Shown one piece after another: positions 35,942 through 48,294 of a stretch of DNA of 64,000 nucleotides. Positions within the stretch are counted from its first letter, which is position 1. Every line of letters begins with the position of its first letter. Made by a program: the position numbers and the translations under genes. The notes beneath the pieces are model-generated. The model did not search any database, was not told where the DNA came from, and saw only the letters and a program-made list of their open reading frames with translations. The stretch comes from Iphione sp. A-MEVVRFRX5. Taxonomy: Eukaryota. Where the stretch lies: assembly GCA_976226885.1 (NCBI GenBank), contig OZ320319.1:34410001-34474000 (forward strand). The letters run 5' to 3'.

Positions 35942-38281
35942 CCTCGCGGTCGCCGTCGGCGCTTCGCCGCCTCCCGCTACTACTCGCCAAGTCTCTAAGC
36001 TGCTAAAACCCCGTACCCTGACCGTAACCTGCCCTACCTCTCTCCCTTTCCTTCTTCCACCAAACTCCTGTGTCCCTTCCCTGGGAAAGCCCACGGCTGA
36101 AATACTAGACCTTCAAGCATCCACTAACTGGGTGCCCAAGGTATTCTCATTGTATTTCCAGCGCACTTCGGACACGAACGCCTTCCATCGCTACGGTCTG
36201 GAGTTTGTGGAGATAGGGCAATACTTTATGTGATGCTGACTTAGTTGTATACATTGTCTTGTAGCAGAAAGGCATGGAATCTTTTGATCAATTCCAGCCT
36301 GCTTATCTGACTCTTTTGGTCAGGGTCTCAACATGAGCGGGGAGAGATTGTATTATTAGTATACAAAAGTGAAGACTTATATATTGATATATATTTATTA
36401 ACTCTGTATAGAACTGACAGATGGTGGGCAAAGAACGTATCTTTACTGTTGTAGTTTAGACGGTTTTGTGCGTGCGATGCCCGACTAGTGATGGTCATCT
36501 CGATCGTTCTGAATGTAGTGGCTCTGACCACGTGCAGGCCTCAAGGCCGGGCTCTAATGCGTCGAGCCGACTGCGACCGTCAGCAGAGGCGCTGGGATCC
36601 ACAGACAGAGCCATTTGGCACTGCTTTATCGGGATCGGCGGAAACCCAGCGAATCGGATAACGGAGCGTTGTTTATAATGGTTATTGTTTCAAACGAGGG
36701 CGGCCTCTGAAAATCCCGTAATTTAGGCGCGATCGATTAATCAGAAACATTTTAACCCCCTTACCCCCCCCCCCTCCCCGAACAGACACCAGCCCACTCG
36801 CCTGATCCTCCCCCATGACCCCCTTTTACCGGTGCCCGTCCACCCCCAAAGCGCCAGCCACCCGTTCGACGATTACGTTTCGGCGGATGTGGAGGCAAAA
36901 GAAAGCGGAATTCGACGCGGACGAAGAATCGGCACCGAAAACACGGCGCCGTGCCACGCGTCAATTAGACCCCTGTCAATCGCGTAATTCGGAAATATTC
37001 TAATTCCGAGGCAGATTCACTTTGCACGGGGTGCTGGGGCGGACAGCAATCTTGGGAGGAGGGTGAGTGCGACGGTTTTAGTGACGGAAACCGTCGTCTA
37101 GCCAAGATTTGTCGATTGTTGACCAGAGTTTCGTGATTTTCGCCTGCTTCTTGTTCACCACCTCACAATAGAGTATATATATTACACATACAAAGAAAGT
37201 ACCTCCAATACACCGACAGGTGTGCAGAAAATGCCTCAAACGTTGGGCGCCATGCTGCGGCCACTGGCGCCATTGTTGTTGATTGTCATTCTTAAGTTAG
37301 TGGTCAATCCTGACTATAGTTTGCTTACTTTACTTGAATATATTTCTGGTTTTTGGCAAAATTGTGTTCACCATCGGAATGCAAGATGAGTACCTCAGAT
37401 AGTTCTTCTTAGCTCATATTTTAGACGACAACCGACTGCCTCGAAACAGCACTACCCTCAAAGAATCTAGTGTTATATTATCATGTATCGATTGCGCATT
37501 TAGCATGGTCAAGTTACCGTATATATACGTATATCATAGGGTACCTCCGGCTGCCATAGCAACAAGCAAGCCTTCAAAAGGCACTCCTCATCATTATTGT
37601 GGCAGCTGTTTTGTGCTGTTCTGTATCTGTGTGTAGGTATAAGTATAGGGAGAGACCAGTAAGCTTATTGGATATCTGTGACAAGATCTGTGACGTCATA
37701 GTTCGCCTGGTGGACGTTTTACCAACTATTACCCCTCCCCCTACAACGTTGCTCCTTTGTTGTCTTGTCTTGCTTATCACGGTTGTCATGCTGTCTGGAA
37801 AACTGTATACACTTTGGCGCGATTTTGTGCGAATTTTAGATCGTTATAATGGTTCTTGTTGCAACAATATATGCTCAGGAGTCTGTGTAGTAGTCCCTAT
37901 TTTTTAGAAGCGGTCTACAACAATCCAGAGCCAGCCAAATAGGAAACATGCCTCAAGTTACAGGACCTCAGAAAGATAATTTGTTGTGGTTGCTACCATG
38001 TGGTATATGTAAGAGACATATGTTCAAGTCGTTTTGGAAAGTTTATAGTCTGCAGGAATTGTTCGAAGTTGTCATCACCAAGTGTGCAGACTTATTATAG
38101 ACTTAATATCAGCAAAGAGTTCCTGTTATTATAATTTTGAAAGATCAGACATAATATCAGTGGCATAGAGGTTGACGTTGTTTAACTTATTCATTTCCAT
38201 CAATACCTGCACAATTCGTTTTGAATGTGTTGCTGACGGACATTTCTAGAAAAGACTCTTCAGTTACCTGCTTTTCGATAG

Positions 38282-38540
38282 TGTAGTGCTGCTGCGGCAT
38301 GGCGCTCAGCTGCTGCATCCGGTGCAGCAGCTGCAGCGGCAGGGGGGTGCAGCTGCTGCATGCGGCATGATTTAGGCGGGAAATCAGAGAGAGGCTTGGG
38401 GTATATAAGGGGGATTTTGCCTTGCCAGTTGTTGTTCTTCGCTGGATACCTTACCTTTCACATCTTACTCTTGTTGAGCAATAAAGCTGACCTTCTTTAA
38501 CCTGCCGTTATGTCTTATTTGCGGAGTGGCAAACGCTACA
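38282..38540 (+). repeat. 5' LTR (259 bp)
   Basis: TGTAGT...CGCTACA; TATATAA 38402-38408, Inr-like CCAGTT 38425-38430, AATAAA 38480-38485; no differences from 48036-48294 found by eye. Confidence 0.97.
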
Positions 38541-40045
38541 TTGGTGGCAGCGGTGGGATTGAGGACCCACCGGCTGGTAGGAGACGTTCGGCAGGGAGAG
38601 GGGTGTCTGCACCTACGAGAGGAAAAGGGGTGGGACGCATAGCGCCTCCCCAAGACTGGGTTTCGAGTGAAGAAGAGACCCTGAGCTCGGACAGCGACAT
38701 CACGTTCGCGGAGATGGGCCGCAGAGGGACGGCCCGCAGCGGCACGGGTTCACCAGACCGCAGCGGCGATGCAGGACCATCGCACCGCAGCGGCACACTG
38801 GCTGACTGCCGCAGCGGATCTGGGGTCGCGAAGGGAGACTCGAGCGGGGTACGCCGCTGCGGCACCAACGCACCGCAAGGCCCCTCGGGCAGGGGGGCGG
38901 GAAGTGAACCGACCGGCGCCGCGGGCGCCGCAGCGGCCGGGGCCCCGCCGGTCCCGGGCCCTCGACCCATCCGAGGGGGTGCAACGGCCCGACCCCCAGT
39001 GAGCCCCAACCTGACTTCAACTGCGACGTCAACCCCCACCCCGTCCCCGACGGGGGCGACCGGGGGGGAAGGCGTGACACCGGCAGTACCGCCACACCAC
39101 CCCTCGGCGGGGGAGGAACTCGGCGCGGCGGAACCGGCCCACCTAGTGAGGGACTTGCTTTCGGAGCTCCAGTCAGCCCTCCGTCCACCGGCTCCGCCCC
39201 CTAAGCGATTCCATGTGAAGCCGGAGTCGTTCAACGGTAATGTACCGTTGGCGGAGTTCCTCCACCACTTCGGATTGGTGGCAAAAGCCAACCGCTGGGA
39301 GGAAGCCGAGCAGGCACTTCAGTTGAGTGTCTGCCTCCGCGGCTCCGCGCAGTCCGCCCTGCGGTCCGCAGCAGTGGACGTTACTGCGCCGGGAGCCTTC
39401 ACTCGTATCGTAGAGGTGCTTCGCCTCCGCTTCCAATCGGAGGATCGGGCAACTTACTACGAGCAAGAGCTAAAGCAACGTAAACAAGGGAAGGACGAGG
39501 ACGTACAGAAGCTCGCAGAAGAAGTGGAGCGGCTAGTCCGACAGGCATACCCGGAGGCGGAAGGGTCCTGGCTGGACCGAATGTGCCGCGACGCCTTCGT
39601 CTCGGCTCTTCGGGATGAACGGAGCCGGAGATGGGTGGTTCAGGCCAAGGCCCGGACCTTCCAATCTGCCATCTCGGAAGCGCTCCTGGCGGAGTCCTAC
39701 CACCGGGCCGAGAAAGAAAGGACATCCGGGGCTACAGCGAGCCGAGTGCATGCTGCGCAGACGGAGGCTCAGGAGGTTGCTGTAGCCAGCGCAAAACCCC
39801 CCCCCTCCTCTGGGCTGGAGAAAATCGAGAAGCTGCTGCTACAGCTACTGGAGCGACCGGTTGCGCCCTCAAGCACACCCTCTGCCGGAAAGAAAGGGGG
39901 GAAGAAGAACGGAGGCGAGGGCTGCTTCTTTTGTAAGCAGCCGGGCCACTTTAAGAGGGACTGCCCGGCACGGAAAGCGGCCGAGTCAGAGGCCACCCCC
40001 CCGACTCCACCGGAAAACGAGCAGCCGCCCGTCCCAGCGCAGTAG
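38510..40045 (+). CDS. gag: Gag (511 aa): disordered RSG/Pro-rich N-terminus, capsid-like domain, single CCHC zinc knuckle
   Basis: FHVKPESFNGNVPLAEFLHHFGLVAKANRW...LRGSA (gypsy capsid-like) and CFFCKQPGHFKRDC (CX2CX4HX4C). The first AUG after the TATA/Inr is 38510; an alternative Met lies near 38714. Confidence 0.93.
   Translation: MSYLRSGKRYIGGSGGIEDPPAGRRRSAGRGVSAPTRGKGVGRIAPPQDWVSSEEETLSSDSDITFAEMGRRGTARSGTGSPDRSGDAGPSHRSGTLADCRSGSGVAKGDSSGVRRCGTNAPQGPSGRGAGSEPTGAAGAAAAGAPPVPGPRPIRGGATARPPVSPNLTSTATSTPTPSPTGATGGEGVTPAVPPHHPSAGEELGAAEPAHLVRDLLSELQSALRPPAPPPKRFHVKPESFNGNVPLAEFLHHFGLVAKANRWEEAEQALQLSVCLRGSAQSALRSAAVDVTAPGAFTRIVEVLRLRFQSEDRATYYEQELKQRKQGKDEDVQKLAEEVERLVRQAYPEAEGSWLDRMCRDAFVSALRDERSRRWVVQAKARTFQSAISEALLAESYHRAEKERTSGATASRVHAAQTEAQEVAVASAKPPPSSGLEKIEKLLLQLLERPVAPSSTPSAGKKGGKKNGGEGCFFCKQPGHFKRDCPARKAAESEATPPTPPENEQPPVPAQ
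38542..38560 (+). promoter_or_regulatory. Primer-binding site, tRNA-Leu
   Basis: TGGTGGCAGCGGTGGGATT is complementary to the 3' end of metazoan tRNA-Leu(AAG/TAG) (...AAUCCCACCGCUGCCA-CCA); it starts 1 nt after the LTR. Confidence 0.88.
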
Positions 40046-40055
40046 GGCGGGCGGC
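40012..40055 (+). promoter_or_regulatory. Putative -1 programmed ribosomal frameshift signal (gag-pol)
   Basis: G_GAA_AAC in gag frame (40012-40018), a 5-nt spacer, then an 11-bp stem 40024-40034/40045-40055. The pol frame is -1 relative to gag and open from 39937. Confidence 0.72.
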
Positions 40056-40077
40056 GAACGCAGCAGAGACCCCCCTG

Positions 40078-43000
40078 ATGGCCCTGGCTTCCGCCGTGGA
40101 GGAAGAACCTTCGGTAGTCCTGGCGGGACGACGGCGGAAGGGCTGCAGCGGGGTGCTCCTGGAGGGGAGCTTAGCGGGAGTCTCGGTAGATTGGCTCATA
40201 GACACGGGGGCGTCGGCGTCCCTCTTGTCATCCCGGATATTCGAGACCTTGGAAGGGGTCCCGCTGGGACCGGTGGATGCTCGAGTATTTGGGGTGGATG
40301 GCGGAGCCTTACGGGTCCGAGGCTCCATTGAAGCGGAGGTCCAATTCGGACCAGTTTCGCTACCAGTTCGAGCAAAGGTAGTAGACATGGAGATCCCGGC
40401 GTTGCTGGGCCTGGACTGGCTAGACCGCTGGGGAGCAGCGGTTGACGCCAGGCTGGCCCAAGTTACGTTGAGACCTGGCCTTATAGATCGAGCGGCAAGC
40501 CTCCGTGCCCTCCGGGATCAGGAGATTCCGGCCGGGCAGACGGGCTGGGTCCAGGCGGAAGCGTGCGTGGGGAGCTTGGGCTCCCCGGAGGGAGTGACCA
40601 CGGCGAACCTCCGGTTTGAGGAACGCTCGGGGCTGCGGGTAGCCCAGGCTGTGGTCAAGCCCGAGGGAGGACGAGTGTGGGTCCCTGTATGGAACCCAGG
40701 TCCGCAGTTGGCGCGCGTTTTCGGGGGGACACGACTCGCAGAATATCAACCAGTGGATGTCCTGGCAGGCGCGGTCAGCGCTGCGGAAGAAGGAGTGGAA
40801 CAGGACGAGGCGGTGCAACTCCTACTCAGACAACTCCCCGAACACTTGTCCGCGGAGGATCGGGAACGTATCGGAGGCATGTTGCGGGAAAACAAAGAGG
40901 TGTTCCAAACAGAGAGCGGGCCCCTCGGCTGCAATCCTGAGGTACAGCATCGGATAGACACGCAGGGCCATCCACCCATCCGACAGAGGGCTCGGAGGCT
41001 ACCACCCCATAAACGGGCGGTGGTACAGGAAGAGATCGACAAGATGGTGGGGAAGGGGGTGTTGGAAGCCTCCACTAGCCCCTGGGCATCGCCATTAGTG
41101 CTGGTGCAGAAGAAGGATGGGGGTGTGCGCTTCTGCATCGACTATCGGAAGCTTAACCAGGTCACCAAGAAGGATGCATACCCGCTTCCCCGCATAGACG
41201 ACACGTTAGACGCGCTACAGGGCAGCAAGTACTTCTCCGCCATCGACCTGGCCAGTGGGTACTGGCAGGTCCGGATGGCCCCGGAGGACGCGGAGAAAAC
41301 GGCCGTATGCACACCTGTGGGGCTGTACCAGTTCCGGGTGATGCCCTTCGGGCTGTGCAACGCCCCATCGACCTTCGAGAGGTTGATGGAGGCCGTCCTC
41401 CGGGGTCTGGTGGGCCTGGAGTGCCTAGTTTACCTAGACGATGTGATCGTCTTGGGGCGGTCGGTGGAGGAAATGTGTGCCCGACTGAACACCGTATTCC
41501 GTCGCCTGCGGGAGGCGGGCCTGCGGGTCAAGGCAAAGAAGTGTCAACTGTTCCGACGGGAGGTGGACTACTTAGGCCATCGGGTGTCCGAGGAAGGAGT
41601 GGGGGTCGACCCGGAAAAGGTCCGGGCCATCGTGGAATGGCCTCGCCCCCGCTGCTCGGCGGAGGTCCGCAGCTTCCTGGGGCTTTGCTCCTATTATAGG
41701 AGCTTTGTGCAAGGTTTTGCCACCATCGCCTCTCCGTTGCACTCCCTCGCGGACAAAGCGGCCGAGTTCCGCTGGACCGAGGCCTGCCAGGAGGCTTTTG
41801 AGCGGCTGAAACTACAACTAGCCTCCACGCCAATCCTGGGGTACCCGGCCCCTCGTGGCCGGCTACTGCTCGACACCGACGCTTCTGACACCGGGGTCGG
41901 GGCGGTCCTCTCGCAGGAACAAGGGGAACAGGAACGCGTGTTGGCCTATGCCAGCCGTACTCTCACCCGCCAGGAGCGCAATTATTGCGTTACCCGAAGA
42001 GAGTTGCTGGCCGTGGTGTTCGCACTCAGAAAATTCCGTTGCTATGTGAACGGCCGCCAGCTGGAGATTCGAACTGACCACGACTCCTTGAAGTGGCTGT
42101 GTAACTTCCGGGAGCCTCAAGGCCAGCTGGCGCGCTGGTTAGAGGAGGTGTTCTGCCACGATGTGCAGATCAAGCACCGCCCTGGACGCCAGCACGCTAA
42201 CGCGGATGCCCTTTCCCGACAAGAGTGTAAACAATGTGGCCGGCGGGGAGAGGCCGAGGAAGAACGCGCCGCCGCCGTCGCAGTAAGAGGAGTGGTGGGA
42301 GGTCCCGAGCTGGCAGCGGCACAGAGAGAAGAACCCACGACGGCAGAATTACTCACCGCCCTCGAGGAAGGACAAGCTATTCCGGGTCTGCGCCTGGGGT
42401 TAACTTGGGAAGAGAGGCAACTGCGCTCGGAGGGGGATCGTTTGGCCCAGCGAGAGGGAATCCTGATCCGGCGCTGGGAGAGAGAGGACGGGCAGGTGGT
42501 GCCGCAAGCCTATGTCCCCAAGACGCTGCGGAAGGCCCTCTGGCAAGAGGCCCATGCAGGGGCTCTGGGGGGCCATTTGGGAGCGGAGAAGACCGGAGCG
42601 ATGCTGAGGATGCGTTGGTTCTGGCCAGGAATGTCGCGGGACATAGAGCGTTGGAGCCGGTGCTGCAAGGCCTGCCAACAACGGAAGGGGCCAGGGTGGA
42701 AACGCCGAGCCCCCCTACAGAGGCGCCCGGTAGCGGAGCCGTGGGAGATACTGGCTGTCGACATCTTGGGGCCACTTCCGATCACCACCCGCGGCCACCG
42801 CTATATCCTGGTAGTTGCTGACCACTTTTCGAAGTGGACAGAGGCCTTCCCCCTCGCGGAGGCCACAGCAGTCGCCACGGCCGAAGTGATCATCCGAGAA
42901 ATTGTATGCCGGTTCGGACCCCCCCGGGTCCTGCATTCCGACCAAGGCCGCAATTTCGAGGCAGCCCTGTTCGCAGAGGTGCTCCATCTGCTTGGAATCG

Positions 43001-46000
43001 AGAAGTCGCGCACGACCCCTTACCACCCTCAGGCAGATGGGGTGGTGGAGCGATTTAATCGCACCTTGGGGAATATGCTCGGGACCCTGGCGGAGGAGCG
43101 GCACCAGGACTGGGACCTGGCGTTGCCATTTGTGATGGCCGCCTACCGTGCGACCCCACACAGCGCTACGGGAGAGTCCCCCAACTGGGTGTTGCTGCAC
43201 CGAGAGGTCACCCTGCCGATTGAATTACGCTATGGACACCCAGGACCGACGCCGGTCGAACGGGGGGAGTATACGAGCAGACTGGAGGAGGAAGTTCGCT
43301 CCGCCCACGAGCGGGTAGCGACGCGACTCAGCCGCGTAGCCGCCCACCAGAAAGATTGGTACGACCGGAAGGTGCGTCCGCAGTCGTATCATGAAGGGCA
43401 GAAGGTGTGGCTGTTTACCCCGTTACGGAAAAAGGGCGTCTCCCCAAAACTACAGAGTTGGTGGGAGGGCCCGTGGGTAGTGGAAAAGGCACTGTCCCCA
43501 GTCGTGTATCGAGTCAGCCGGGCGAAGAGGAAACGGGTAGTCCACGCCGATCGGCTGAAGCCAGCCCACTTGGACCCACACATCACCTGCAGAGGTAGGG
43601 ATGAGCCGCTGCGGAACGACCCATGCCGCAGCGGCAATCCGACAGAGGGCAGCATGAGTCTGGCCAGGACCGCCACTATAAGTACCCTCCCCCTACCAGA
43701 CTCCCCCCCACGTCACGGTAGGCTACGCGAGGAACTTAGGATACCGCAGCGGCACAAGATCGTTGTCGACAAGGAAGACTACATACCGCTGCGGAACTAT
43801 TCCAAACTAGAGGGCGCTGCGGTCTACACTTCCGCCGCTGCTGTTGCATATCACGCTCGTGGCCCTGTATCGTTCGTCAAGGAGGTCAACTGGTTGAAAA
43901 TACCGGCATTTTCCGCCAGACAAGGGGTCTGGCCGCTGCACAGCTCCCCTAGGACTTCCGCTGCGCCTCGTACCCCTTCAACAATCACGCCCCACGAGGT
44001 GAGCTGTATTATTCATTTTGGCATGGGCGATATTACGGGTAAGCAAGCTAGACCGCGTTGGATTAATGGGCTCGGCCGAGCCGCAGCGGCTGTCAAGTAT
44101 GATCGAATTGTACGGGTTGGGGGTACCGCTGCAGAAGGGGCCACGTGGAACCGATTCTCACACGGCTATCTCTCTTCCGCAGCGAGGTGGGCGTGCCGCG
44201 CCGGCACCACGTGCAGCCGATTGATCCCGCTCCGCCGCGGCAGCACCCAAGCGTCACGAAGAAGTCCTACGCACCGCAGCGGCATATCCGACGGCACCAC
44301 CCGGTCGGCTAGTACAGAGAGGGTCCCCACCGTCGCCGCCGCAGAAGGACTTCCCGCCCTCCCTATACCGGCGCCCGCCGCAGCGGACCTCAAGAGTGCC
44401 ACCTCCCCGGGTCGTGCTGCAGCGGCACGGTCCACCGAAGTACGCCGTCGCAACCGCTACCCTCATCGTTCGTGGAGGAGTGAGCGGAGCCGCTGTGCCA
44501 TGGCAGAGGAAGGGTCTTCGTCCTCCTCGTCTCCCGCATCATCGCCCCCGTCTTCGCCGGAGAGGCCGGAGAGGCCGGACCAACCACGCCCCTTCGTCTG
44601 CCCCCTCTGTGGAGTGGGCTTTTCCCTACAATCCAACCTCAACCGGCACCACGGGGATGTCCACCTCCCAGAGGGCTTCGGCTGGTTGTGCCCGGTGGAA
44701 GCATGTGGTCAACAGGCATTCCACAGGCGCACGGACTGGAAGCGCCATCTTTTGCACGTTCACAGTCCCAACGACTTCTTGTTTACAGTAGATGTGGGCT
44801 ACTTGCGCTTCTGGGGGCTCAACCCGACCCGCGGAGAGCGCCGGCTGTGTCCCGCCAGCCTGGAGGGTGAGTTTCGCCGGCGGCAGAAAGTTGAGGCTCG
44901 AAACCGCCAACGAGAACGCCGGGCGGGGCTGGGGATCGGCGGCTCAGGCAAGACCAAGCGGAAGAAGAACACTGAGGGATGCAACACTACTGCCACTCCT
45001 AATCCGCCGCCGGCCGGAGGAGGGGATCCCGGTACACCCCTGCAGGACGAGAGGCCAACGGAACCTGGGCCGCCACCTACTGACGCCTCTCGACCAAGCG
45101 GAAGTTCATCAGCCGGGGGCGAGCCACAGCCCTCAACGTCCACCGGGACAGCGACGCCCGCCGGGTCGAGGGCGATCGGCGGCGAGAAAAAGAAGAAGAA
45201 GAAGAAAGCCTCCCGGCCGCAGGTCACCTCCCCAGGGGGGAAGCGGGCACGACGCCGCATGGGAGTGGTGGCCCGGGATTGGCAGGCGACTGCCCCTCAT
45301 TCGACGGGCCAGGCAGCCGCCCCCTCTTGTCATTGCTCCGCCAGCGCCCCTGGAGTGCGTGCAGTTACTGTAGCGGAGGGGACGGCACCGAGAGATGCGA
45401 CCGCCGGGGGCGGGCCCCGGACCCCCTTGGCCACTCCACCCACTACTAGCGGGTCCGAGAGAGACGGAACGTCTCAGGGAGACAGTACGCCAGCTGCGGC
45501 GTACTCTGGACCGGCGCTTCCGTCCCGCTATGAACGCGGGGTGGCGCGGCGCACCTACGGCCGCACGCCACCAGAGGTAGCCCGGCCGCGTACGCCGCCC
45601 CCGCCTCCCCGGGTGACCACACCAGGAGACATTGACCTCCCCGGGACGACCCACGTACGACGTCTCTTCGAGGACGAAGACGGGGAGCCTATTCCAACGG
45701 CTGACGATGCGGCACAGATATTGGTGTCCTTGGCTGGGCCGGCCAAGTTGTCACCCCTTCCACCTACGACAGGAGCCAGACCATCGATGGGTCGCGGTAA
45801 TGACCGTACGCCCGTGGGAGGGACTAGGCAGGTGGGAATTCGTGCCACCTTCCGCACCAAAGACAGCAACAGGGGTGCCCGGTCTCCCTCTCCGCTGCGC
45901 CGGCCCGGTCGCAGTCGTGGAGTCACTCGCCGCTCCACGCCCCCACGCCCCGGAGCGTGCCCGACCCCGCAGGAGGAGGCGGACCGGCAGTTAGACCTGC

Positions 46001-47895
46001 GCCTGGGGCCGGGATGGACCCGACCACCAGAAGACTCGGAGGTGGTAGATTTAGTTACCCCCCCGGGCTCACCAAAGGCCCCCCCGCCGAAGAAAACTAA
46101 GGCTGCCGGGGTAGGGACAACTCCGGGCAAGGACCATACCTCCACCGCCCAACAGAAACAGGACACAGCCCAGCTGGCGACGTGCGCCGAGGCCGACCCC
46201 ATCCCGTCTACCATGGGAGAGGAGGTGTCTTCGGCAGGGGAGGAGCTGAGCGATCACGACGCGACGGAATTGAAGGAGGTGCTGCGAGCCGTCCAAACGA
46301 TAGAGCCGCATGGGACCCCCGACCCGGCGGCGCCAAGAGCCCGGCCCGTCGCCCAGCCCACGACACCTGCGCGGGTGGAAGGGACCACTCCGGTCGCAAT
46401 GGCCGAACCAGAACCCCCGGGCGGAGAGGAGGCCGGAGATTCAGAAACGGAGTTGAAGGAGGTATTGCGGGTCACACAGACCCGGGCTGACACCGATGAG
46501 ACTCGCCCCACCCCGCGTACCCCGCCTGGTGTGCCCGTCCCGGAGAGACCCCTTCACCCTAGCCAGACACCTGGAACGCTCCCGGGGCTCGTGCGTCCAT
46601 GGGAATCAGCCCTCCCACCAACGGATCCGGGGCTCTCGGGGCCGAGTGCCCCCCCAGACAGCCTGACCGGCGCGCCGGTCGAAACGTCCAGGCCGGAGGG
46701 GGTAGGACCCGTGTCCGGAGAACAGGAGAACATGGCTCACCCGCCAGAGAGCACCGAACCGATGGAGACAGAGGGATCACCCCCGCAGGGGGCAGAGGGG
46801 CCTGTTTCGGCCCGGCCCCAGGAGGAGGCGCCACCTGAGGAGCCTACAGGACCATCTGTGGCGGGCCTGAGTCACCCTACGGAGGCGACGACAGAGCCGG
46901 GGGAGGACCTCGAGCCAATGGACACCGACCTGCCGCCCACGTCCACAGAGGAGACCACACAGCCCGCCTCAGTCATCGTAGCCGGTGGAAGAGAGGGCGA
47001 CGAACCCCCGGACGTGGCAGAAGAGTCGACCCCCTCGTCCCCCCAGACCGACCAGGTGGTCAGACCGACGGCACCGGTCGGGCAGACATCCCCGCCGGAC
47101 GACGGGTCGACCACAGCAGAAGACCCTGGTGCGTTACCCCGACTGGATGTAGGGATCGGACATTCGGACCACTTTATCCAGACCGACCCCCCCACACTTC
47201 CCCGTGAGGATCGTCCAGTGGCACCCGACAATGGTACGGCGACGGACCACGTATCAGCACTGCCAGGAGACTCGCCCCGGGACGAGCACAACCCTGGAGT
47301 ACCACCGGGAGGGAGTTCAGACCGGCCAGCGCCCTTGGGACCTCGCCTCCCACCACATTCTACGCCGGCTCGGCCCAGTGGGATTGGCGTCCGGCCGCCA
47401 CTAGGGTCTCCCCTCGCACGAGTGTCGCCGGCACCGGCTCCGGGAGGAATTCGGCCCGTACGTAGCCTGCTCAACTCGCCGATGCTCCAGGACATTTCTG
47501 GCCCGACTGCTCCGGAAGAGGAGGTACCTGACGCGGTGTACGCGTGGGCCGCGTCCCGGGTTATCTCCCCGGAATCGGCAGTGCCGGCCGGCTGGATGGT
47601 GTTGAGTAATGCGTCATCATTGGACTTGCAAGTTCTTACGCAGGGGCAGGTCAGAGTAGTGATCAAGCAAGTGGTGAGATTCCGCCGTTTGGGGGCCCCG
47701 ATCGCCGGCAGCTCCCTCTCGCGCTGGTATGGTAATCACGGGACAGTACTGACCAGGGGGCGGCCGGTGCGACGTCTAGCCTCCTGGCAGGAGGAGCCCG
47801 TAGAACTGGGAGGAGCAGATGTCACCATTAAAGAAATATGGACGGTATTTCTGAACGCCGAACAGCCAGACCTCGATTCACTGTCGTCGCAGTAG
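40078..47895 (+). CDS. pol: Pol polyprotein frame (2605 aa from the first Met; probably entered by frameshift): protease, RT, RNase H, integrase, plus an in-frame ~1,440-aa C-terminal extension
   Basis: Protease WLIDTG (DTG 40201-40209); RT FCIDYRKLN and YLDD (41431-41442); RNase H DTDASD (41872) and NYCVTRRELLAVV; integrase HHCC (42553-42675), D 42760, D 42940, E 43048; GPY/F WEGPW (about 43465); no stop until 47893. Confidence 0.96.
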   Translation: MALASAVEEEPSVVLAGRRRKGCSGVLLEGSLAGVSVDWLIDTGASASLLSSRIFETLEGVPLGPVDARVFGVDGGALRVRGSIEAEVQFGPVSLPVRAKVVDMEIPALLGLDWLDRWGAAVDARLAQVTLRPGLIDRAASLRALRDQEIPAGQTGWVQAEACVGSLGSPEGVTTANLRFEERSGLRVAQAVVKPEGGRVWVPVWNPGPQLARVFGGTRLAEYQPVDVLAGAVSAAEEGVEQDEAVQLLLRQLPEHLSAEDRERIGGMLRENKEVFQTESGPLGCNPEVQHRIDTQGHPPIRQRARRLPPHKRAVVQEEIDKMVGKGVLEASTSPWASPLVLVQKKDGGVRFCIDYRKLNQVTKKDAYPLPRIDDTLDALQGSKYFSAIDLASGYWQVRMAPEDAEKTAVCTPVGLYQFRVMPFGLCNAPSTFERLMEAVLRGLVGLECLVYLDDVIVLGRSVEEMCARLNTVFRRLREAGLRVKAKKCQLFRREVDYLGHRVSEEGVGVDPEKVRAIVEWPRPRCSAEVRSFLGLCSYYRSFVQGFATIASPLHSLADKAAEFRWTEACQEAFERLKLQLASTPILGYPAPRGRLLLDTDASDTGVGAVLSQEQGEQERVLAYASRTLTRQERNYCVTRRELLAVVFALRKFRCYVNGRQLEIRTDHDSLKWLCNFREPQGQLARWLEEVFCHDVQIKHRPGRQHANADALSRQECKQCGRRGEAEEERAAAVAVRGVVGGPELAAAQREEPTTAELLTALEEGQAIPGLRLGLTWEERQLRSEGDRLAQREGILIRRWEREDGQVVPQAYVPKTLRKALWQEAHAGALGGHLGAEKTGAMLRMRWFWPGMSRDIERWSRCCKACQQRKGPGWKRRAPLQRRPVAEPWEILAVDILGPLPITTRGHRYILVVADHFSKWTEAFPLAEATAVATAEVIIREIVCRFGPPRVLHSDQGRNFEAALFAEVLHLLGIEKSRTTPYHPQADGVVERFNRTLGNMLGTLAEERHQDWDLALPFVMAAYRATPHSATGESPNWVLLHREVTLPIELRYGHPGPTPVERGEYTSRLEEEVRSAHERVATRLSRVAAHQKDWYDRKVRPQSYHEGQKVWLFTPLRKKGVSPKLQSWWEGPWVVEKALSPVVYRVSRAKRKRVVHADRLKPAHLDPHITCRGRDEPLRNDPCRSGNPTEGSMSLARTATISTLPLPDSPPRHGRLREELRIPQRHKIVVDKEDYIPLRNYSKLEGAAVYTSAAAVAYHARGPVSFVKEVNWLKIPAFSARQGVWPLHSSPRTSAAPRTPSTITPHEVSCIIHFGMGDITGKQARPRWINGLGRAAAAVKYDRIVRVGGTAAEGATWNRFSHGYLSSAARWACRAGTTCSRLIPLRRGSTQASRRSPTHRSGISDGTTRSASTERVPTVAAAEGLPALPIPAPAAADLKSATSPGRAAAARSTEVRRRNRYPHRSWRSERSRCAMAEEGSSSSSSPASSPPSSPERPERPDQPRPFVCPLCGVGFSLQSNLNRHHGDVHLPEGFGWLCPVEACGQQAFHRRTDWKRHLLHVHSPNDFLFTVDVGYLRFWGLNPTRGERRLCPASLEGEFRRRQKVEARNRQRERRAGLGIGGSGKTKRKKNTEGCNTTATPNPPPAGGGDPGTPLQDERPTEPGPPPTDASRPSGSSSAGGEPQPSTSTGTATPAGSRAIGGEKKKKKKKASRPQVTSPGGKRARRRMGVVARDWQATAPHSTGQAAAPSCHCSASAPGVRAVTVAEGTAPRDATAGGGPRTPLATPPTTSGSERDGTSQGDSTPAAAYSGPALPSRYERGVARRTYGRTPPEVARPRTPPPPPRVTTPGDIDLPGTTHVRRLFEDEDGEPIPTADDAAQILVSLAGPAKLSPLPPTTGARPSMGRGNDRTPVGGTRQVGIRATFRTKDSNRGARSPSPLRRPGRSRGVTRRSTPPRPGACPTPQEEADRQLDLRLGPGWTRPPEDSEVVDLVTPPGSPKAPPPKKTKAAGVGTTPGKDHTSTAQQKQDTAQLATCAEADPIPSTMGEEVSSAGEELSDHDATELKEVLRAVQTIEPHGTPDPAAPRARPVAQPTTPARVEGTTPVAMAEPEPPGGEEAGDSETELKEVLRVTQTRADTDETRPTPRTPPGVPVPERPLHPSQTPGTLPGLVRPWESALPPTDPGLSGPSAPPDSLTGAPVETSRPEGVGPVSGEQENMAHPPESTEPMETEGSPPQGAEGPVSARPQEEAPPEEPTGPSVAGLSHPTEATTEPGEDLEPMDTDLPPTSTEETTQPASVIVAGGREGDEPPDVAEESTPSSPQTDQVVRPTAPVGQTSPPDDGSTTAEDPGALPRLDVGIGHSDHFIQTDPPTLPREDRPVAPDNGTATDHVSALPGDSPRDEHNPGVPPGGSSDRPAPLGPRLPPHSTPARPSGIGVRPPLGSPLARVSPAPAPGGIRPVRSLLNSPMLQDISGPTAPEEEVPDAVYAWAASRVISPESAVPAGWMVLSNASSLDLQVLTQGQVRVVIKQVVRFRRLGAPIAGSSLSRWYGNHGTVLTRGRPVRRLASWQEEPVELGGADVTIKEIWTVFLNAEQPDLDSLSSQ
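44500..47895 (+). CDS. ORF3-like cargo in the pol frame (1131 aa from GCCATGG): tandem C2H2 zinc fingers, poly-Lys NLS, Pro-rich linker, unknown C-terminal domain
   Basis: ZF1 CPLCGVGFSLQSNLNRHHGDVH (44599-44664), ZF2 CPVEACGQQAFHRRTDWKRHLLHVH (44689-44763), K7 at 45187-45207. A strong Kozak ATG lies at 44500; its use as an independent start is inferred. Confidence 0.7.
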   Translation: MAEEGSSSSSSPASSPPSSPERPERPDQPRPFVCPLCGVGFSLQSNLNRHHGDVHLPEGFGWLCPVEACGQQAFHRRTDWKRHLLHVHSPNDFLFTVDVGYLRFWGLNPTRGERRLCPASLEGEFRRRQKVEARNRQRERRAGLGIGGSGKTKRKKNTEGCNTTATPNPPPAGGGDPGTPLQDERPTEPGPPPTDASRPSGSSSAGGEPQPSTSTGTATPAGSRAIGGEKKKKKKKASRPQVTSPGGKRARRRMGVVARDWQATAPHSTGQAAAPSCHCSASAPGVRAVTVAEGTAPRDATAGGGPRTPLATPPTTSGSERDGTSQGDSTPAAAYSGPALPSRYERGVARRTYGRTPPEVARPRTPPPPPRVTTPGDIDLPGTTHVRRLFEDEDGEPIPTADDAAQILVSLAGPAKLSPLPPTTGARPSMGRGNDRTPVGGTRQVGIRATFRTKDSNRGARSPSPLRRPGRSRGVTRRSTPPRPGACPTPQEEADRQLDLRLGPGWTRPPEDSEVVDLVTPPGSPKAPPPKKTKAAGVGTTPGKDHTSTAQQKQDTAQLATCAEADPIPSTMGEEVSSAGEELSDHDATELKEVLRAVQTIEPHGTPDPAAPRARPVAQPTTPARVEGTTPVAMAEPEPPGGEEAGDSETELKEVLRVTQTRADTDETRPTPRTPPGVPVPERPLHPSQTPGTLPGLVRPWESALPPTDPGLSGPSAPPDSLTGAPVETSRPEGVGPVSGEQENMAHPPESTEPMETEGSPPQGAEGPVSARPQEEAPPEEPTGPSVAGLSHPTEATTEPGEDLEPMDTDLPPTSTEETTQPASVIVAGGREGDEPPDVAEESTPSSPQTDQVVRPTAPVGQTSPPDDGSTTAEDPGALPRLDVGIGHSDHFIQTDPPTLPREDRPVAPDNGTATDHVSALPGDSPRDEHNPGVPPGGSSDRPAPLGPRLPPHSTPARPSGIGVRPPLGSPLARVSPAPAPGGIRPVRSLLNSPMLQDISGPTAPEEEVPDAVYAWAASRVISPESAVPAGWMVLSNASSLDLQVLTQGQVRVVIKQVVRFRRLGAPIAGSSLSRWYGNHGTVLTRGRPVRRLASWQEEPVELGGADVTIKEIWTVFLNAEQPDLDSLSSQ

Positions 47896-48022
47896 GGAGC
47901 CTTTGGGCCGCGCCCTACGGTTGATGGTCACGGAAAATTGACACGGCTCGTCTTGGACTCTTTTTGTTGTGCATGTTACTTGGACGTTGTGTTGTTGACG
48001 CGCTTGGGGGCAAGCGCATCTT

Positions 48023-48035
48023 AAGAGGAGGGCAG
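48023..48035 (+). promoter_or_regulatory. Polypurine tract
   Basis: AAGAGGAGGGCAG immediately 5' of the 3' LTR. Confidence 0.85.
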
Positions 48036-48294
48036 TGTAGTGCTGCTGCGGCATGGCGCTCAGCTGCTGCATCCGGTGCAGCAGCTGCAGCGGCAGGGGG
48101 GTGCAGCTGCTGCATGCGGCATGATTTAGGCGGGAAATCAGAGAGAGGCTTGGGGTATATAAGGGGGATTTTGCCTTGCCAGTTGTTGTTCTTCGCTGGA
48201 TACCTTACCTTTCACATCTTACTCTTGTTGAGCAATAAAGCTGACCTTCTTTAACCTGCCGTTATGTCTTATTTGCGGAGTGGCAAACGCTACA
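48036..48294 (+). repeat. 3' LTR (259 bp)
   Basis: Matches 38282-38540 and is followed by the ATAG TSD. Confidence 0.97.

What the first reader, a model, noticed from the sequence alone, without database searches (positions are those of the whole stretch)
38734..44386. Thirteen copies of palindrome CCGC(A/T)GCGG in two clusters; the half-site matches the element's own zinc-finger code
Seen: perfect copies start at 38734, 38758, 38785, 38809, 38854 and 38928 (just 3' of the PBS), and at 43606, 43626, 43744, 43786, 44081, 44274 and 44378 (between integrase and the zinc fingers), with near-matches in the LTR. I found no perfect copy in the PR-RT-RH-INT core. A rough expectation at about 65% GC is below 1 copy per 10 kb. 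In the second cluster the motif occupies all three reading frames (PLR/PQR, RSG, AAA), which points to a nucleotide-level constraint. Established code: ZF2 helix (-1 R, 3 D, 6 R) predicts GCG, and ZF1 (6 R, 3 N) predicts GAN, giving 5'-GCG-G(A)N; each arm of the palindrome reads GCGG, followed in several copies by A. Inference: the sites form inverted dimer-type binding arrays for the element's own finger protein, i.e. a self-contained regulatory circuit analogous to the Su(Hw) array of Drosophila gypsy but with an element-encoded factor. The alternative is RNA dimerisation or packaging palindromes.
Basis: partly seen in the sequence, partly recalled or inferred. Interest (0 to 1): 0.82.

Follow-up and report, generated by a model that had tools for sequence, protein, structure and literature searches.

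The report
Conserved palindrome arrays in a retrotransposon
A young Gypsy-type jumping gene keeps about fourteen copies of the short palindrome CCGC-N-GCGG at two fixed places, near its two promoter-like regions, and evolution has preserved the DNA letters rather than the encoded protein, so they are probably docking sites for a regulator, possibly the element's own zinc-finger protein, although no binding was tested.

Summary
Observation confirmed. All 13 copies are at the stated coordinates. Shuffles give 0.27 (dinucleotide) and about 1.1 (synonymous-codon). The real motif is CCGC-N-GCGG with a free centre; a 14th copy, CCGCCGCGG, starts at 44232.

In four sibling subfamilies 73-85% identical, the arms are 90-95% invariant against 46-54% background. 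Both cluster regions show relaxed protein constraint (dN/dS 0.5-1.1) and lowered synonymous change, so the constraint is on nucleotides.

The element (38282-48294) is an intact Ty3/gypsy copy whose pol continues in frame into a strongly conserved two-finger module. GCGGCA half-sites also lie upstream of the LTR TATA box. Two palindromes lie 50-70 bp upstream of an invariant internal TATA block ahead of the finger ORF's ATG.

Three other finger-bearing families in this genome put their own GCGG-based hexamer (GCGGCA, GCGGAG, GCGGCT) at the same places. Finger 2, predicted to read GCG, is invariant; finger 1 varies.

Best reading: DNA binding-site arrays serving two promoters, with the element's own fingers the leading but unproven binder. 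The finger code fits only GCGG; the predicted A follows in 4 of 13 copies. An RNA-level role is not excluded.

The scan reported the same idea before on other DNA of this genome, for GCGGAG families.

The parts
38278..38281 (.). Target-site duplication ATAG (5' copy); the 3' copy is at 48295-48298
   Evidence: Read directly from the sequence
38282..38540 (+). 5' LTR, 259 bp, TGTAG...CTACA, identical to the 3' LTR
   Evidence: 100% identity; ends read
38294..38367 (+). U3 half-sites: GCGGCA at 38294, 38336 and 38362, within CTGCTGCGGCA, CTGCAGCGGCA and ATGCGGCA. They lie about 108, 66 and 40 bp upstream of the TATA box
   Evidence: the block is conserved across subfamilies
38402..38408 (+). LTR TATA box (TATATAA); the AATAAA poly(A) signal is at 38480-38485
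   Evidence: invariant in all subfamilies
38542..38559 (+). Primer-binding site TGGTGGCAGCGGTGGGAT, the exact complement of the 18-nt tRNA 3' fragment ATCCCACCGCTGCCACCA. It contains GCAGCGG
   Evidence: Assignment to tRNA-Leu is from memory
38510..40045 (+). gag ORF (511 aa, CCHC knuckle). It starts in U5 and reads through the PBS
38734..38936 (+). Cluster 1: six CCGC-N-GCGG sites starting at 38734, 38758, 38785, 38809, 38854 (centre T) and 38928
   Evidence: arms 90% invariant against 46% background; 0 of 20000 random sets; dN/dS 0.57-1.1, low dS
40078..47895 (+). pol ORF (2605 aa): protease, RT, RNase H and integrase to about 43564, then a 1430-aa tail in the same frame
43606..43634 (+). 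Site pair CCGCTGCGG and CCGCAGCGG, 20 bp apart and 50-70 bp upstream of the internal TATA. Their centres (T and A) do not change in the sibling copies compared. As RNA they could form a 10-bp stem
43677..43694 (+). Invariant block TATAAGTACCCTCCCCCT: candidate internal TATA promoter
   Evidence: identical in all 16 copies of four subfamilies. Three of the four families compared have a TATA-like box 780-950 bp upstream of finger 1
43744..44425 (+). Rest of cluster 2: sites at 43744, 43786, 44081, 44232 (centre C), 44274 and 44378, plus the decayed site CTGCAGCGG at 44417
   Evidence: arms 95% invariant against 54% background; 0 of 20000; dN/dS 0.5, dS 0.54-0.67 against 0.9-1.1 in integrase
44500..44502 (+). 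Conserved in-frame ATG (CCATGGC) that could start a separate finger protein
44593..44763 (+). Two C2H2 fingers. Finger 1 helix is LQSNLNR and finger 2 helix is RRTDWKR
   Evidence: dN/dS 0.02-0.04
44764..44930 (+). Conserved extension after finger 2 (TVD..F.G.NPT..CP), followed by an arginine-rich helix
   Evidence: helix at model residues 96-119, pLDDT about 94
48023..48035 (+). Polypurine tract AAGAGGAGGGCAG
48036..48294 (+). 3' LTR

Best explanation
CCGC-N-GCGG is a cis-acting nucleotide element kept by selection. In this family it is the palindromic form of a GCGG-core motif (extended half-site GCGGCA) that finger-bearing Ty3/gypsy elements of this genome place at three spots:
- in U3, upstream of the LTR TATA box;
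- in the first 400 nt after the primer-binding site;
- around a conserved internal TATA box between integrase and the finger ORF.

The most likely mechanism is double-stranded DNA binding sites for a sequence-specific protein that co-regulates the LTR promoter and an internal promoter for the accessory gene. Each palindrome would offer two outward-facing GCGG half-sites with an uncontacted central base. Two two-finger molecules could sit back to back on it, as yeast ADR1 does on its palindrome.

The leading candidate for the protein is the element's own two-finger module. That would make a positive feedback loop like the foamy-virus Tas, LTR and internal-promoter system.

What is shown: enrichment, purifying selection on the arms, placement relative to the TATA boxes, family-specific motif versions, and strong selection on the fingers.

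What is inferred: the sites act as DNA, the internal TATA block is a promoter, and the fingers are the binder.

My odds: real cis element 0.9; acts as DNA binding sites 0.55; bound by the element's own fingers on DNA 0.35.
For: Enrichment and selection:
- 13-14 copies against 0.27-0.75 expected. The excess survives synonymous-codon shuffles.
- Arms are 95% (cluster 2) and 90% (cluster 1) invariant across four subfamilies, against 54% and 46% background. None of 20000 random sets reached this. The centre varies among A, T, C and G.
- The cluster regions have dN/dS 0.5-1.1 with reduced dS. Integrase and the gag core have 0.05, and the fingers 0.02-0.04.
- The spacing spectrum is sharp. This family has 14 copies with a one-base spacer and at most 3 at any other spacing.

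Placement:
- Three GCGGCA half-sites lie upstream of the LTR TATA box.
- Two palindromes lie 50 and 70 bp upstream of an 18-nt invariant TATA block.
- A conserved CCATGG start lies ahead of the fingers.

Families compared, as copies per kb in U3 / the integrase-to-finger spacer / the gag-pol core:
- W (this family): GCGGCA 15 / 7 / 1.2
- X: GCGGCA 25 / 7-9 / 1.7
- Y: GCGGAG 15 / 10 / 2.7
- Z: GCGGCT 25 / 24 / 1.4

One host genome therefore holds different motif versions, which fits a factor that diverges together with the element.

Fingers:
- Finger 2 residues Arg-1, Asp+3 and Arg+6 are invariant, with code GCG.
- Finger 1 keeps Asn+3, and Arg+6 in intact copies, but varies at -1, +1, +2 and +5.
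- The invariant finger matches the invariant 5' half of the site and the variable finger the variable 3' half, in the correct antiparallel polarity.
- The fold model has pLDDT 81. Its best structural matches are DNA-bound tandem fingers (CTCF, Tramtrack, ADR1), although the E-values are weak. ADR1 also matches both fingers by sequence.

Outgroup and precedents:
- Relatives from another organism (loci L067 and L068) have the same PBS but no finger module, and lack the motif.
- Precedents are ADR1 on a palindrome (PMC6769490) and Tas binding both the LTR and the internal promoter (PMC4929722, PMC8670036).
Against: - No binding, transcript or transcription-start evidence exists. No sequencing run was listed.
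- Most palindromes lie downstream of the presumed start sites, inside transcribed and coding sequence.
- The code predicts GCGGAN, but the dominant half-site here is GCGGC. A follows in 4 of 13 top-strand half-sites and in none on the bottom strand.
- Finger-1 residues do not track the last two bases in a way the code explains. Q-N-R goes with both GCGGCA and GCGGAG. QSNLNR goes with both GCGGCA and GCGGCT.
- Only four families were compared, and they are related, so co-occurrence of fingers and GCGG motifs is confounded by descent.
- The spacer differs between families: one base here, five in family Z, and a head-to-head arrangement in family Y. This is awkward for a fixed protein dimer.
- The linker between the fingers is not the canonical TGEKP, and finger 2 has one extra residue.
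Confidence: 0.45

Rival explanations
1. RNA-level element. The palindromes act in the genomic RNA, and perhaps in a subgenomic RNA. They could be duplex-forming sequences for dimerisation, packaging or long-range folding. Or they could be sites for an RNA-binding protein, for example a Rev- or CERV-like export factor made from the post-integrase ORF, which carries an arginine-rich helix next to the fingers.
For: - Eleven of the 14 sites lie in presumably transcribed leader-like regions.
- The three centre-T sites each sit next to a centre-A site and could form perfect 9-10 bp stems. Region 43590-43810 folds with z = -3.2.
- The 43606/43626 pair is the one pair of adjacent sites whose centres are complementary (T and A) and never change.
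- Families Y and Z have true hairpin-capable versions: 6-bp arms with a 5-nt spacer, 7-bp arms with a 15-nt spacer, and one 13-bp stem.
- The extended motif is strand-biased: GCGGCA occurs 16 times on the plus strand and 6 on the minus strand of the element counted without its 3' LTR.
- r(CCGCAGCGG) is used in the literature as a self-duplex model with an A-A mismatch (PMC4493008).
- Cer1 CERV shows that a post-integrase accessory protein can control genomic RNA export (PMC10309623).
- The fold model has a long arginine-rich helix after the fingers.
Against: - A one-base spacer cannot form a hairpin on its own.
- Both arms are conserved as sequence, with no compensatory change anywhere.
- Centres change without a matching change in a partner site. 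Column 498 goes from T to A while column 444 stays A.
- Cluster 1 does not fold better than shuffles (z = -1.5).
- The same half-sites are arrayed upstream of the TATA box in U3 in all four families, which is the classical position of DNA sites.
- No Rfam family matches.
Confidence: 0.3
2. Binding sites for a host transcription factor or insulator protein, recruited by the element as gypsy recruits Su(Hw). The element's fingers would have another role.
For: - The placement and selection evidence is the same as for the best explanation.
- Precedent: twelve Su(Hw) sites lie in the gypsy 5' leader (PMC2374998).
- Relatives without fingers from another organism also carry dense arrays of other short motifs in their LTRs and after pol. 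Arrays therefore do not need an element-encoded factor.
- The finger code fails at the fifth base.
Against: - Four families living in one genome use different extensions of a common GCGG core. A single host factor would be expected to hold the motif constant.
- I could not name a host factor with this specificity.
- Only one copy of the motif occurs in the 54 kb of host DNA in the window, in AT-rich sequence.
Confidence: 0.2
3. By-product of coding or composition. The copies would reflect Arg-Ser-Gly or Ala-rich peptide repeats, GC-rich codon usage, or decayed trinucleotide repeats.
For: - Five of the six cluster-1 sites share one frame (RSG/RCG) and lie 24-27 nt apart, which suggests a tandem-duplication origin. 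One subfamily-D copy has a further 27-nt duplication.
Against: - Synonymous-codon shuffles never reach the observed counts.
- Cluster 2 uses all three frames.
- Centre changes alter the amino acid (RSG to RGG, PLR to PQR) while the arms stay fixed.
- dN/dS is 0.5-1.1 in these regions.
Confidence: 0.03

Closest known systems
Su(Hw) binding-site array (gypsy insulator) of Drosophila gypsy
   Same: About a dozen copies of a short motif are clustered just downstream of the primer-binding site of a Ty3/gypsy element, separated by variable spacers, and bound by a zinc-finger protein (12 sites in 340 bp; PMC2374998).
   Different: - The gypsy array is non-coding, AT-rich between sites, non-palindromic (YRYTGCATAYYY) and bound by a host 12-finger protein.
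- Here the sites lie inside gag and pol coding sequence, are GC-rich palindromes, recur in a second cluster and in U3, and the binder is unknown.
Foamy-virus Tas transactivator with LTR and internal promoter
   Same: - A retroelement-encoded DNA-binding activator whose response elements lie both in the LTR and in an internal promoter ahead of its own gene (PMC4929722, PMC8670036).
- Here the same GCGG-based sites lie upstream of both the LTR TATA box and an internal TATA block ahead of the finger ORF.
   Different: - Tas is not a zinc-finger protein and shows no homology.
- The host element is a complex retrovirus, not an LTR retrotransposon.
- Activity of the internal promoter and transactivation are untested here.
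Yeast ADR1 on UAS1 of ADH2
   Same: A two-finger C2H2 DNA-binding domain of which two molecules occupy a palindrome symmetrically (PMC6769490). ADR1 matches both fingers of this module by sequence (E = 4.5e-4).
   Different: - UAS1 is a 22-bp palindrome with TTGGAG-type half-sites.
- ADR1 is a cellular factor.
- The match reflects the generic finger fold, not orthology.
Cer1 CERV of C. elegans, and the Rev/RRE logic
   Same: A Ty3/gypsy element whose long reading frame continues past integrase into an accessory regulator needed for the element's own expression (PMC10309623).
   Different: - CERV acts on nuclear export of the genomic RNA, comes from a spliced mRNA, and has no C2H2 pair.
- No repeated cis motif is described for it.
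Retroviral dimerisation sites and Ty1 PAL sequences
   Same: Short GC-rich palindromes in the 5' part of the genomic RNA, in Ty1 even inside the gag ORF (from my own knowledge).
   Different: - Those are single, perfectly self-complementary sites exposed in loops.
- Here there are 14 copies with a non-pairing centre, a second cluster 5 kb downstream, and related half-sites in U3.

Membership tests
Ty3/gypsy LTR retrotransposon | Identical LTRs ending TG...CA, a target-site duplication, a PBS next to the 5' LTR and a polypurine tract next to the 3' LTR | tested here: met
   259-bp LTRs 100% identical, TGTAG...CTACA, 4-bp duplication ATAG, an 18-nt PBS, and the tract AAGAGGAGGGCAG
Ty3/gypsy LTR retrotransposon | gag with a CCHC knuckle; pol in the order protease, RT, RNase H, integrase | tested here: met
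   Pfam: zf-CCHC, RVT_1, RT_RNaseH, Integrase_H2C2, rve and Integrase_p58_C, in that order
Leader array of transcription-factor or insulator sites (gypsy Su(Hw) type) | Many copies of one short motif clustered downstream of the PBS | tested here: met
   Six sites in 203 bp, starting 175 nt after the PBS
Leader array of transcription-factor or insulator sites (gypsy Su(Hw) type) | The array lies in the untranslated leader and matches the Su(Hw) consensus | tested here: not met
   The array lies in the gag reading frame, which is open in the subfamilies checked. The motif is unrelated to YRYTGCATAYYY
Leader array of transcription-factor or insulator sites (gypsy Su(Hw) type) | Protein occupancy of the sites | not testable with these tools
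   No binding data are available
Self-encoded transactivator with internal promoter (foamy-virus Tas type) | An internal promoter ahead of the accessory gene | tested here: inconclusive
   An 18-nt TATA block is invariant in four subfamilies, and three of the four families have a TATA-like box at the equivalent place. There is no transcript evidence
Self-encoded transactivator with internal promoter (foamy-virus Tas type) | The same response elements in the LTR promoter and the internal promoter | tested here: met
   The family-specific GCGG hexamer is enriched 6- to 18-fold in both U3 and the spacer, relative to the gag-pol core, in all four families
Self-encoded transactivator with internal promoter (foamy-virus Tas type) | The accessory protein binds those elements and activates transcription | not testable with these tools
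   Only a partial code-based prediction is available (GCGG)
Classical DNA-binding tandem C2H2 fingers | C-x2-4-C-x12-H-x3-5-H spacing with the conserved hydrophobic core | tested here: inconclusive
   Finger 1 is canonical. Finger 2 has 13 residues between the second Cys and the first His. Pfam zf-C2H2 scores 19 bits, below the 25.2-bit cut-off. The PDB phmmer search hits many DNA-binding fingers
Classical DNA-binding tandem C2H2 fingers | A TGEKP-type linker between the fingers | tested here: not met
   The linker is LPEGFGW, with P-x-G-x-G-W kept in three of the four families and G-x-G-W invariant
Classical DNA-binding tandem C2H2 fingers | A fold and finger arrangement like DNA-bound tandem fingers | tested here: met
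   AlphaFold2 pLDDT 81. The best Foldseek matches are CTCF-DNA complexes, with rmsd about 3.1 A over 61 residues, but E is only 0.05
Classical DNA-binding tandem C2H2 fingers | The code-predicted site (GCG GAN) equals the repeated motif | tested here: inconclusive
   GCGG matches in every site. The fifth base is A in 4 of 13 top-strand half-sites and 0 of 13 bottom-strand half-sites
RNA dimerisation or packaging palindrome | A perfectly self-complementary sequence in the 5' leader, presented in a loop | tested here: not met
   The centre is A-A or otherwise mismatched in a self-duplex. Predicted folds put the sites in stems, not loops
RNA dimerisation or packaging palindrome | Compensatory changes that keep pairing | tested here: inconclusive
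   The arms are nearly invariant, so covariation cannot be seen. One adjacent T/A pair keeps complementary centres and another does not

The most novel reading that the evidence does not exclude
A large group of Ty3/gypsy retrotransposons in this animal genome carries a private transcription factor. It is a two-finger protein made as a pol fusion or from an internal promoter, and it recognises GCGG-core sites arrayed at the element's LTR and internal promoters. The protein and its sites co-diverge between families (GCGGCA, GCGGAG, GCGGCT; spacers of one or five bases), so each family would activate only itself. That would be a Tas-like autoregulatory loop in an LTR retrotransposon, and a natural experiment in the co-evolution of zinc-finger specificity.
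Probability: 0.35. Interest if true: 0.85.

Novelty: new variant of a known kind. Interest (0 to 1): 0.6.

Why it matters
Arrays of factor-binding sites in retroelement leaders are known, as are self-encoded transactivators in complex retroviruses. I found no description of a Ty3/gypsy retrotransposon with its own sequence-specific C2H2 factor and matching sites kept by selection at two promoters.

If that reading is true, it shows how a mobile element can escape dependence on host factors. It would also give several naturally diverged finger-and-site pairs, which are useful for testing zinc-finger recognition rules.

Even if the binder turns out to be a host protein or the RNA itself, the result has value. 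Nine-base islands that are 90-95% invariant, inside coding sequence that is otherwise nearly free to change, are an unusually clean case of a cis element overprinted on an open reading frame.

Tried and rejected
Searches and jobs that gave nothing usable:
- Sequencing runs: none was listed for 38541-44500 or 43500-44700. Start sites and splicing could not be examined, and read laying was not used.
- Word-indexed protein search for long polyproteins sharing the finger region found nothing at E <= 1e-5.
- The exhaustive HMMER search with the finger module was swamped by generic multi-finger proteins. No specific relative could be recognised among the 150 proteins listed.
- Pol relatives are at most 56% identical, from arachnids, insects, fish and a sponge. 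The two closest, fetched from an ENA assembly (loci L067 and L068), have the same PBS but no finger module or tail homology and no CCGC-N-GCGG.
- Homodimer prediction for the finger module gave no verdict. It counts neither for nor against.
- ESM Atlas search of the conserved C-terminal domain of the tail gave no usable hit.
- Rfam found no family in 38000-48500.
- A literature search for the 9-mer returned primers and a CAG-repeat duplex model only.

Ideas considered and rejected:
- Codon or composition artefact.
- A peptide-level RSG motif. Cluster 2 uses three frames, and changes at the centre alter the residue.
- Extra tRNA-annealing sites. The PBS shares GCAGCGG with the motif, but the centre varies freely and only 7 nt are complementary.
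- Self-targeted integration by an integrase-finger fusion. The flanks of this copy and of three young siblings carry no GCGG-type site next to the LTR.

Splice donor and acceptor candidates were seen (GTGAG near 38999; a pyrimidine-rich AG ahead of the ATG in family Y), but I did not test them.

Full report
1. THE OBSERVATION

CCGCWGCGG occurs at exactly the 13 stated positions. One unrelated copy lies at 15048 in AT-rich host DNA.

The element runs from 38282 to 48294, has 64% G+C, and sits in a genome of about 42% G+C. Expected counts inside it are:
- 0.27 from dinucleotide shuffles, maximum 3 in 1000;
- 0.3-1.0 from Markov models of order 1-3;
- 0.41 (gag) and 0.72 (pol) from shuffles that permute synonymous codons and keep both proteins, with maxima of 3 and 4 in 1000, against 6 and 7 observed.

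The word is the commonest 9-mer of the element. The frames are as stated.

Three corrections apply:
- The centre is free, and a 14th copy, CCGCCGCGG, starts at 44232.
- C, not A, usually follows GCGG (9 of 13 copies).
- CTGCAGCGG at 44417 is a perfect site in sibling copies, including the three that are 100% identical to this one over the stretch compared.

2. THE ELEMENT

It is an intact Ty3/gypsy copy with these features:
- identical 259-bp LTRs (TGTAG...CTACA) and a 4-bp target duplication, ATAG;
- a TATA box at 38402 and AATAAA at 38480;
- an 18-nt PBS at 38542, the exact complement of the tRNA 3' fragment ATCCCACCGCTGCCACCA (I recall this as tRNA-Leu);
- a gag ORF with a CCHC knuckle;
- pol with protease, RT, RNase H and integrase, ending near 43564;
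- a polypurine tract at 48023.

The pol frame continues for 1430 residues. It holds a conserved in-frame CCATGG start at 44500 and two C2H2 fingers at 44593-44763. The host genome is 1.18 Gb in 89 contigs and carries many copies.

3. SELECTION ON THE MOTIF

Copies in the same genome fall into four subfamilies that are 73-85% identical across cluster 2. The sites stand in the same alignment columns.

With one representative per subfamily:
- The eight arm positions are 95% invariant in cluster 2, against 54% for the surrounding columns.
- They are 90% invariant in cluster 1, against 46%.
- None of 20000 random sets of 9-mers reached either value.

The centre changes among A, T, C and G, even where this alters the amino acid (RSG to RGG, PLR to PQR).

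Codon analysis agrees:

| Region | dN/dS | dS |
|---|---|---|
| Integrase | 0.05 | 0.9-1.1 (comparisons with subfamily A) |
| gag core | 0.05 | 0.5-1.1 |
| Spacer, integrase end to ATG 44500 | about 0.5 | 0.54-0.67 (comparisons with subfamily A) |
| Cluster 1 region | 0.57-1.1 | 0.2-0.66 |
| Finger module | 0.02-0.04 | 1.5-1.9 |

Both cluster regions are therefore weakly constrained as protein but constrained as nucleic acid.

4. WHERE THE SITES STAND

U3 holds three GCGGCA half-sites, about 108, 66 and 40 bp upstream of the LTR TATA box. Two of them lie within one-mismatch versions of the palindrome.

Cluster 2 begins with two perfect sites, at 43606 and 43626. They lie 50-70 bp upstream of TATAAGTACCCTCCCCCT (43677-43694). 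This block is identical in all 16 aligned copies, while its flanks vary.

A TATA-like box is found 780-950 bp upstream of finger 1 in three of the four families compared. The remaining sites lie between this block and the ATG at 44500.

The layout is thus the same twice: a few sites upstream of a TATA box, then an array in the first few hundred bases downstream. Other first-stage notes on this genome proposed internal promoters ahead of finger ORFs in other families. Here that idea rests on conservation only.

5. OTHER FAMILIES

The finger module has thousands of relatives in this genome (3349 first-look candidates). I could fetch three further families whose finger modules are 47-51% identical to this one: X (loci L061, L062, L066), Y (L063) and Z (L064, L065).

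All four families share the same PBS. The count of CCGC-Nk-GCGG peaks sharply:
- k = 1 in this family (14 copies), in X (5-7) and in Y (5);
- k = 5 in Z (10-11 copies), with none at k = 1.

Each family has its own GCGG hexamer, concentrated in U3 and in the spacer before the fingers. The table gives copies per kb, both strands.

| Family | Hexamer | U3 | Spacer | gag-pol core |
|---|---|---|---|---|
| W (this one) | GCGGCA | 15 | 7 | 1.2 |
| X | GCGGCA | 25 | 7-9 | 1.7 |
| Y | GCGGAG | 15 | 10 | 2.7 |
| Z | GCGGCT | 25 | 24 | 1.4 |

Family Y corresponds to the GCGGAG elements reported earlier by this scan.

Two relatives from another organism (loci L067 and L068) have the same PBS and pol 52-56% identical. 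They lack the finger module, lack the motif, and carry other arrays.

6. THE FINGERS

Across families the following are invariant:
- the finger-2 helix residues Arg-1, Asp+3 and Arg+6;
- the G-x-G-W core of the linker;
- a 35-residue extension after finger 2.

Finger 1 keeps Asn+3, and Arg+6 in intact copies. It varies at -1, +1, +2 and +5: LQSNLNR, QPSNLRR, QKQNLRR, HQSNLNR.

By the established recognition code, finger 2 reads GCG and finger 1 reads GAN, giving 5'-GCG GAN. The invariant finger thus faces the invariant GCG, Arg+6 of finger 1 faces the invariant fourth G, and the variable finger faces the two variable bases. The polarity is correct.

The code fails in two ways. The fifth base is C in three of the four families, and the finger-1 residues do not explain the differences between families.

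The AlphaFold2 model has pLDDT 81. It shows two classical fingers, a beta hairpin and a long arginine-rich helix. Its best structural matches are DNA-bound tandem fingers, at weak E-values. ADR1, a two-finger protein of which two molecules bind a palindrome (PMC6769490), matches both fingers by sequence.

7. READING

Most likely (0.55) the sites work as double-stranded DNA sites that serve the LTR promoter and an internal promoter. The element's own finger protein is the leading candidate binder (0.35 overall). The reason is that families sharing one host genome have diverged in the site in step with the one variable finger. This resembles the foamy-virus Tas, LTR and internal-promoter loop (PMC4929722, PMC8670036).

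An RNA-level role (0.3) is not excluded. Its support is:
- T-centre and A-centre sites are adjacent and can form 9-10 bp stems;
- 43590-43810 folds with z = -3.2, although cluster 1 gives only z = -1.5;
- families Y and Z have true hairpin-capable versions;
- the arginine-rich helix and the Cer1 CERV precedent (PMC10309623) would fit an export factor.

A host factor (0.2) fits the gypsy Su(Hw) precedent (PMC2374998) but not the family-specific versions of the motif. A coding or composition artefact is rejected.

8. LIMITS

- There is no expression or binding evidence.
- Only four related families were compared.
- The N run at 16224-16386 was left untouched.

Noticed in passing
window 38510-38560: The gag ORF starts at an ATG inside U5 and reads straight through the primer-binding site (peptide IGGSGGIED). 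The ATG and its first codons are kept in the four subfamilies checked; the frame stays open for 497-511 residues in the better-preserved copies.
   Followed up: partly
window 38542-38559: The PBS is the exact complement of the 18-nt tRNA 3' fragment ATCCCACCGCTGCCACCA listed in PMC12025293, and it contains GCAGCGG, 7 of the 9 bases of the motif. I take this for coincidence, because the motif's centre varies freely.
   Followed up: partly
window 38305-38362: U3 holds conserved CAGCTG-containing palindromes (GCAGCTGCTGCA, three times). A GGGCGGGAAA box lies about 30 bp upstream of the TATA box. Both are distinct from the motif studied here.
   Followed up: no
window 44764-44930: After finger 2 comes a 35-residue stretch with residues invariant across four families (TVD, F.G.NPT, CP), then a long arginine-rich helix (EFRRRQKVEARNRQRERR). 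The helix looks like an RNA-binding arginine-rich motif or a nuclear localisation signal.
   Followed up: partly
window 47320-47892: The last ~160 residues of the tail form a domain conserved between families (49% identity to family Z, 38% to family Y). It has no Pfam or ESM Atlas match. Two ELKEVLR repeats lie upstream of it.
   Followed up: partly
window 44417-44425: This copy reads CTGCAGCGG where sibling copies, including the three 100%-identical ones, read CCGCAGCGG. Lost sites in older copies mostly show CG-to-TG or CG-to-CA changes.
   Followed up: partly
L053 (subfamily D), cluster 1 region: A 27-nt tandem duplication adds one more CCGCAGCGG site, so cluster 1 grows by tandem duplication.
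   Followed up: no
L068:5443-6232 and 13728-14398; L067:12615-12902: Related gypsy elements from another organism (ENA ERZ25767047) have the same PBS and no finger module. They carry other arrays: TCACGCNTG repeats in the LTR, an 18-bp unit repeated 38 times after pol, and 64-bp repeats containing the palindrome CTGCCA-N-TGGCAG.
   Followed up: partly
L063:6180-6450 and 6734-6990: Family Y has about 100-bp and 81-bp tandem repeats between integrase and the fingers. They contain head-to-head GCGGAG...CTCCGC palindromes and one 13-bp-stem hairpin made of a CCGCAGCGG / CCGCTGCGG pair.
   Followed up: partly
window 16224-16386: A run of 163 N (assembly gap or masked).
   Followed up: no
window 15048-15056: The only CCGCTGCGG outside the element lies in AT-rich DNA with no related context. 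I take it for a chance match.
   Followed up: yes
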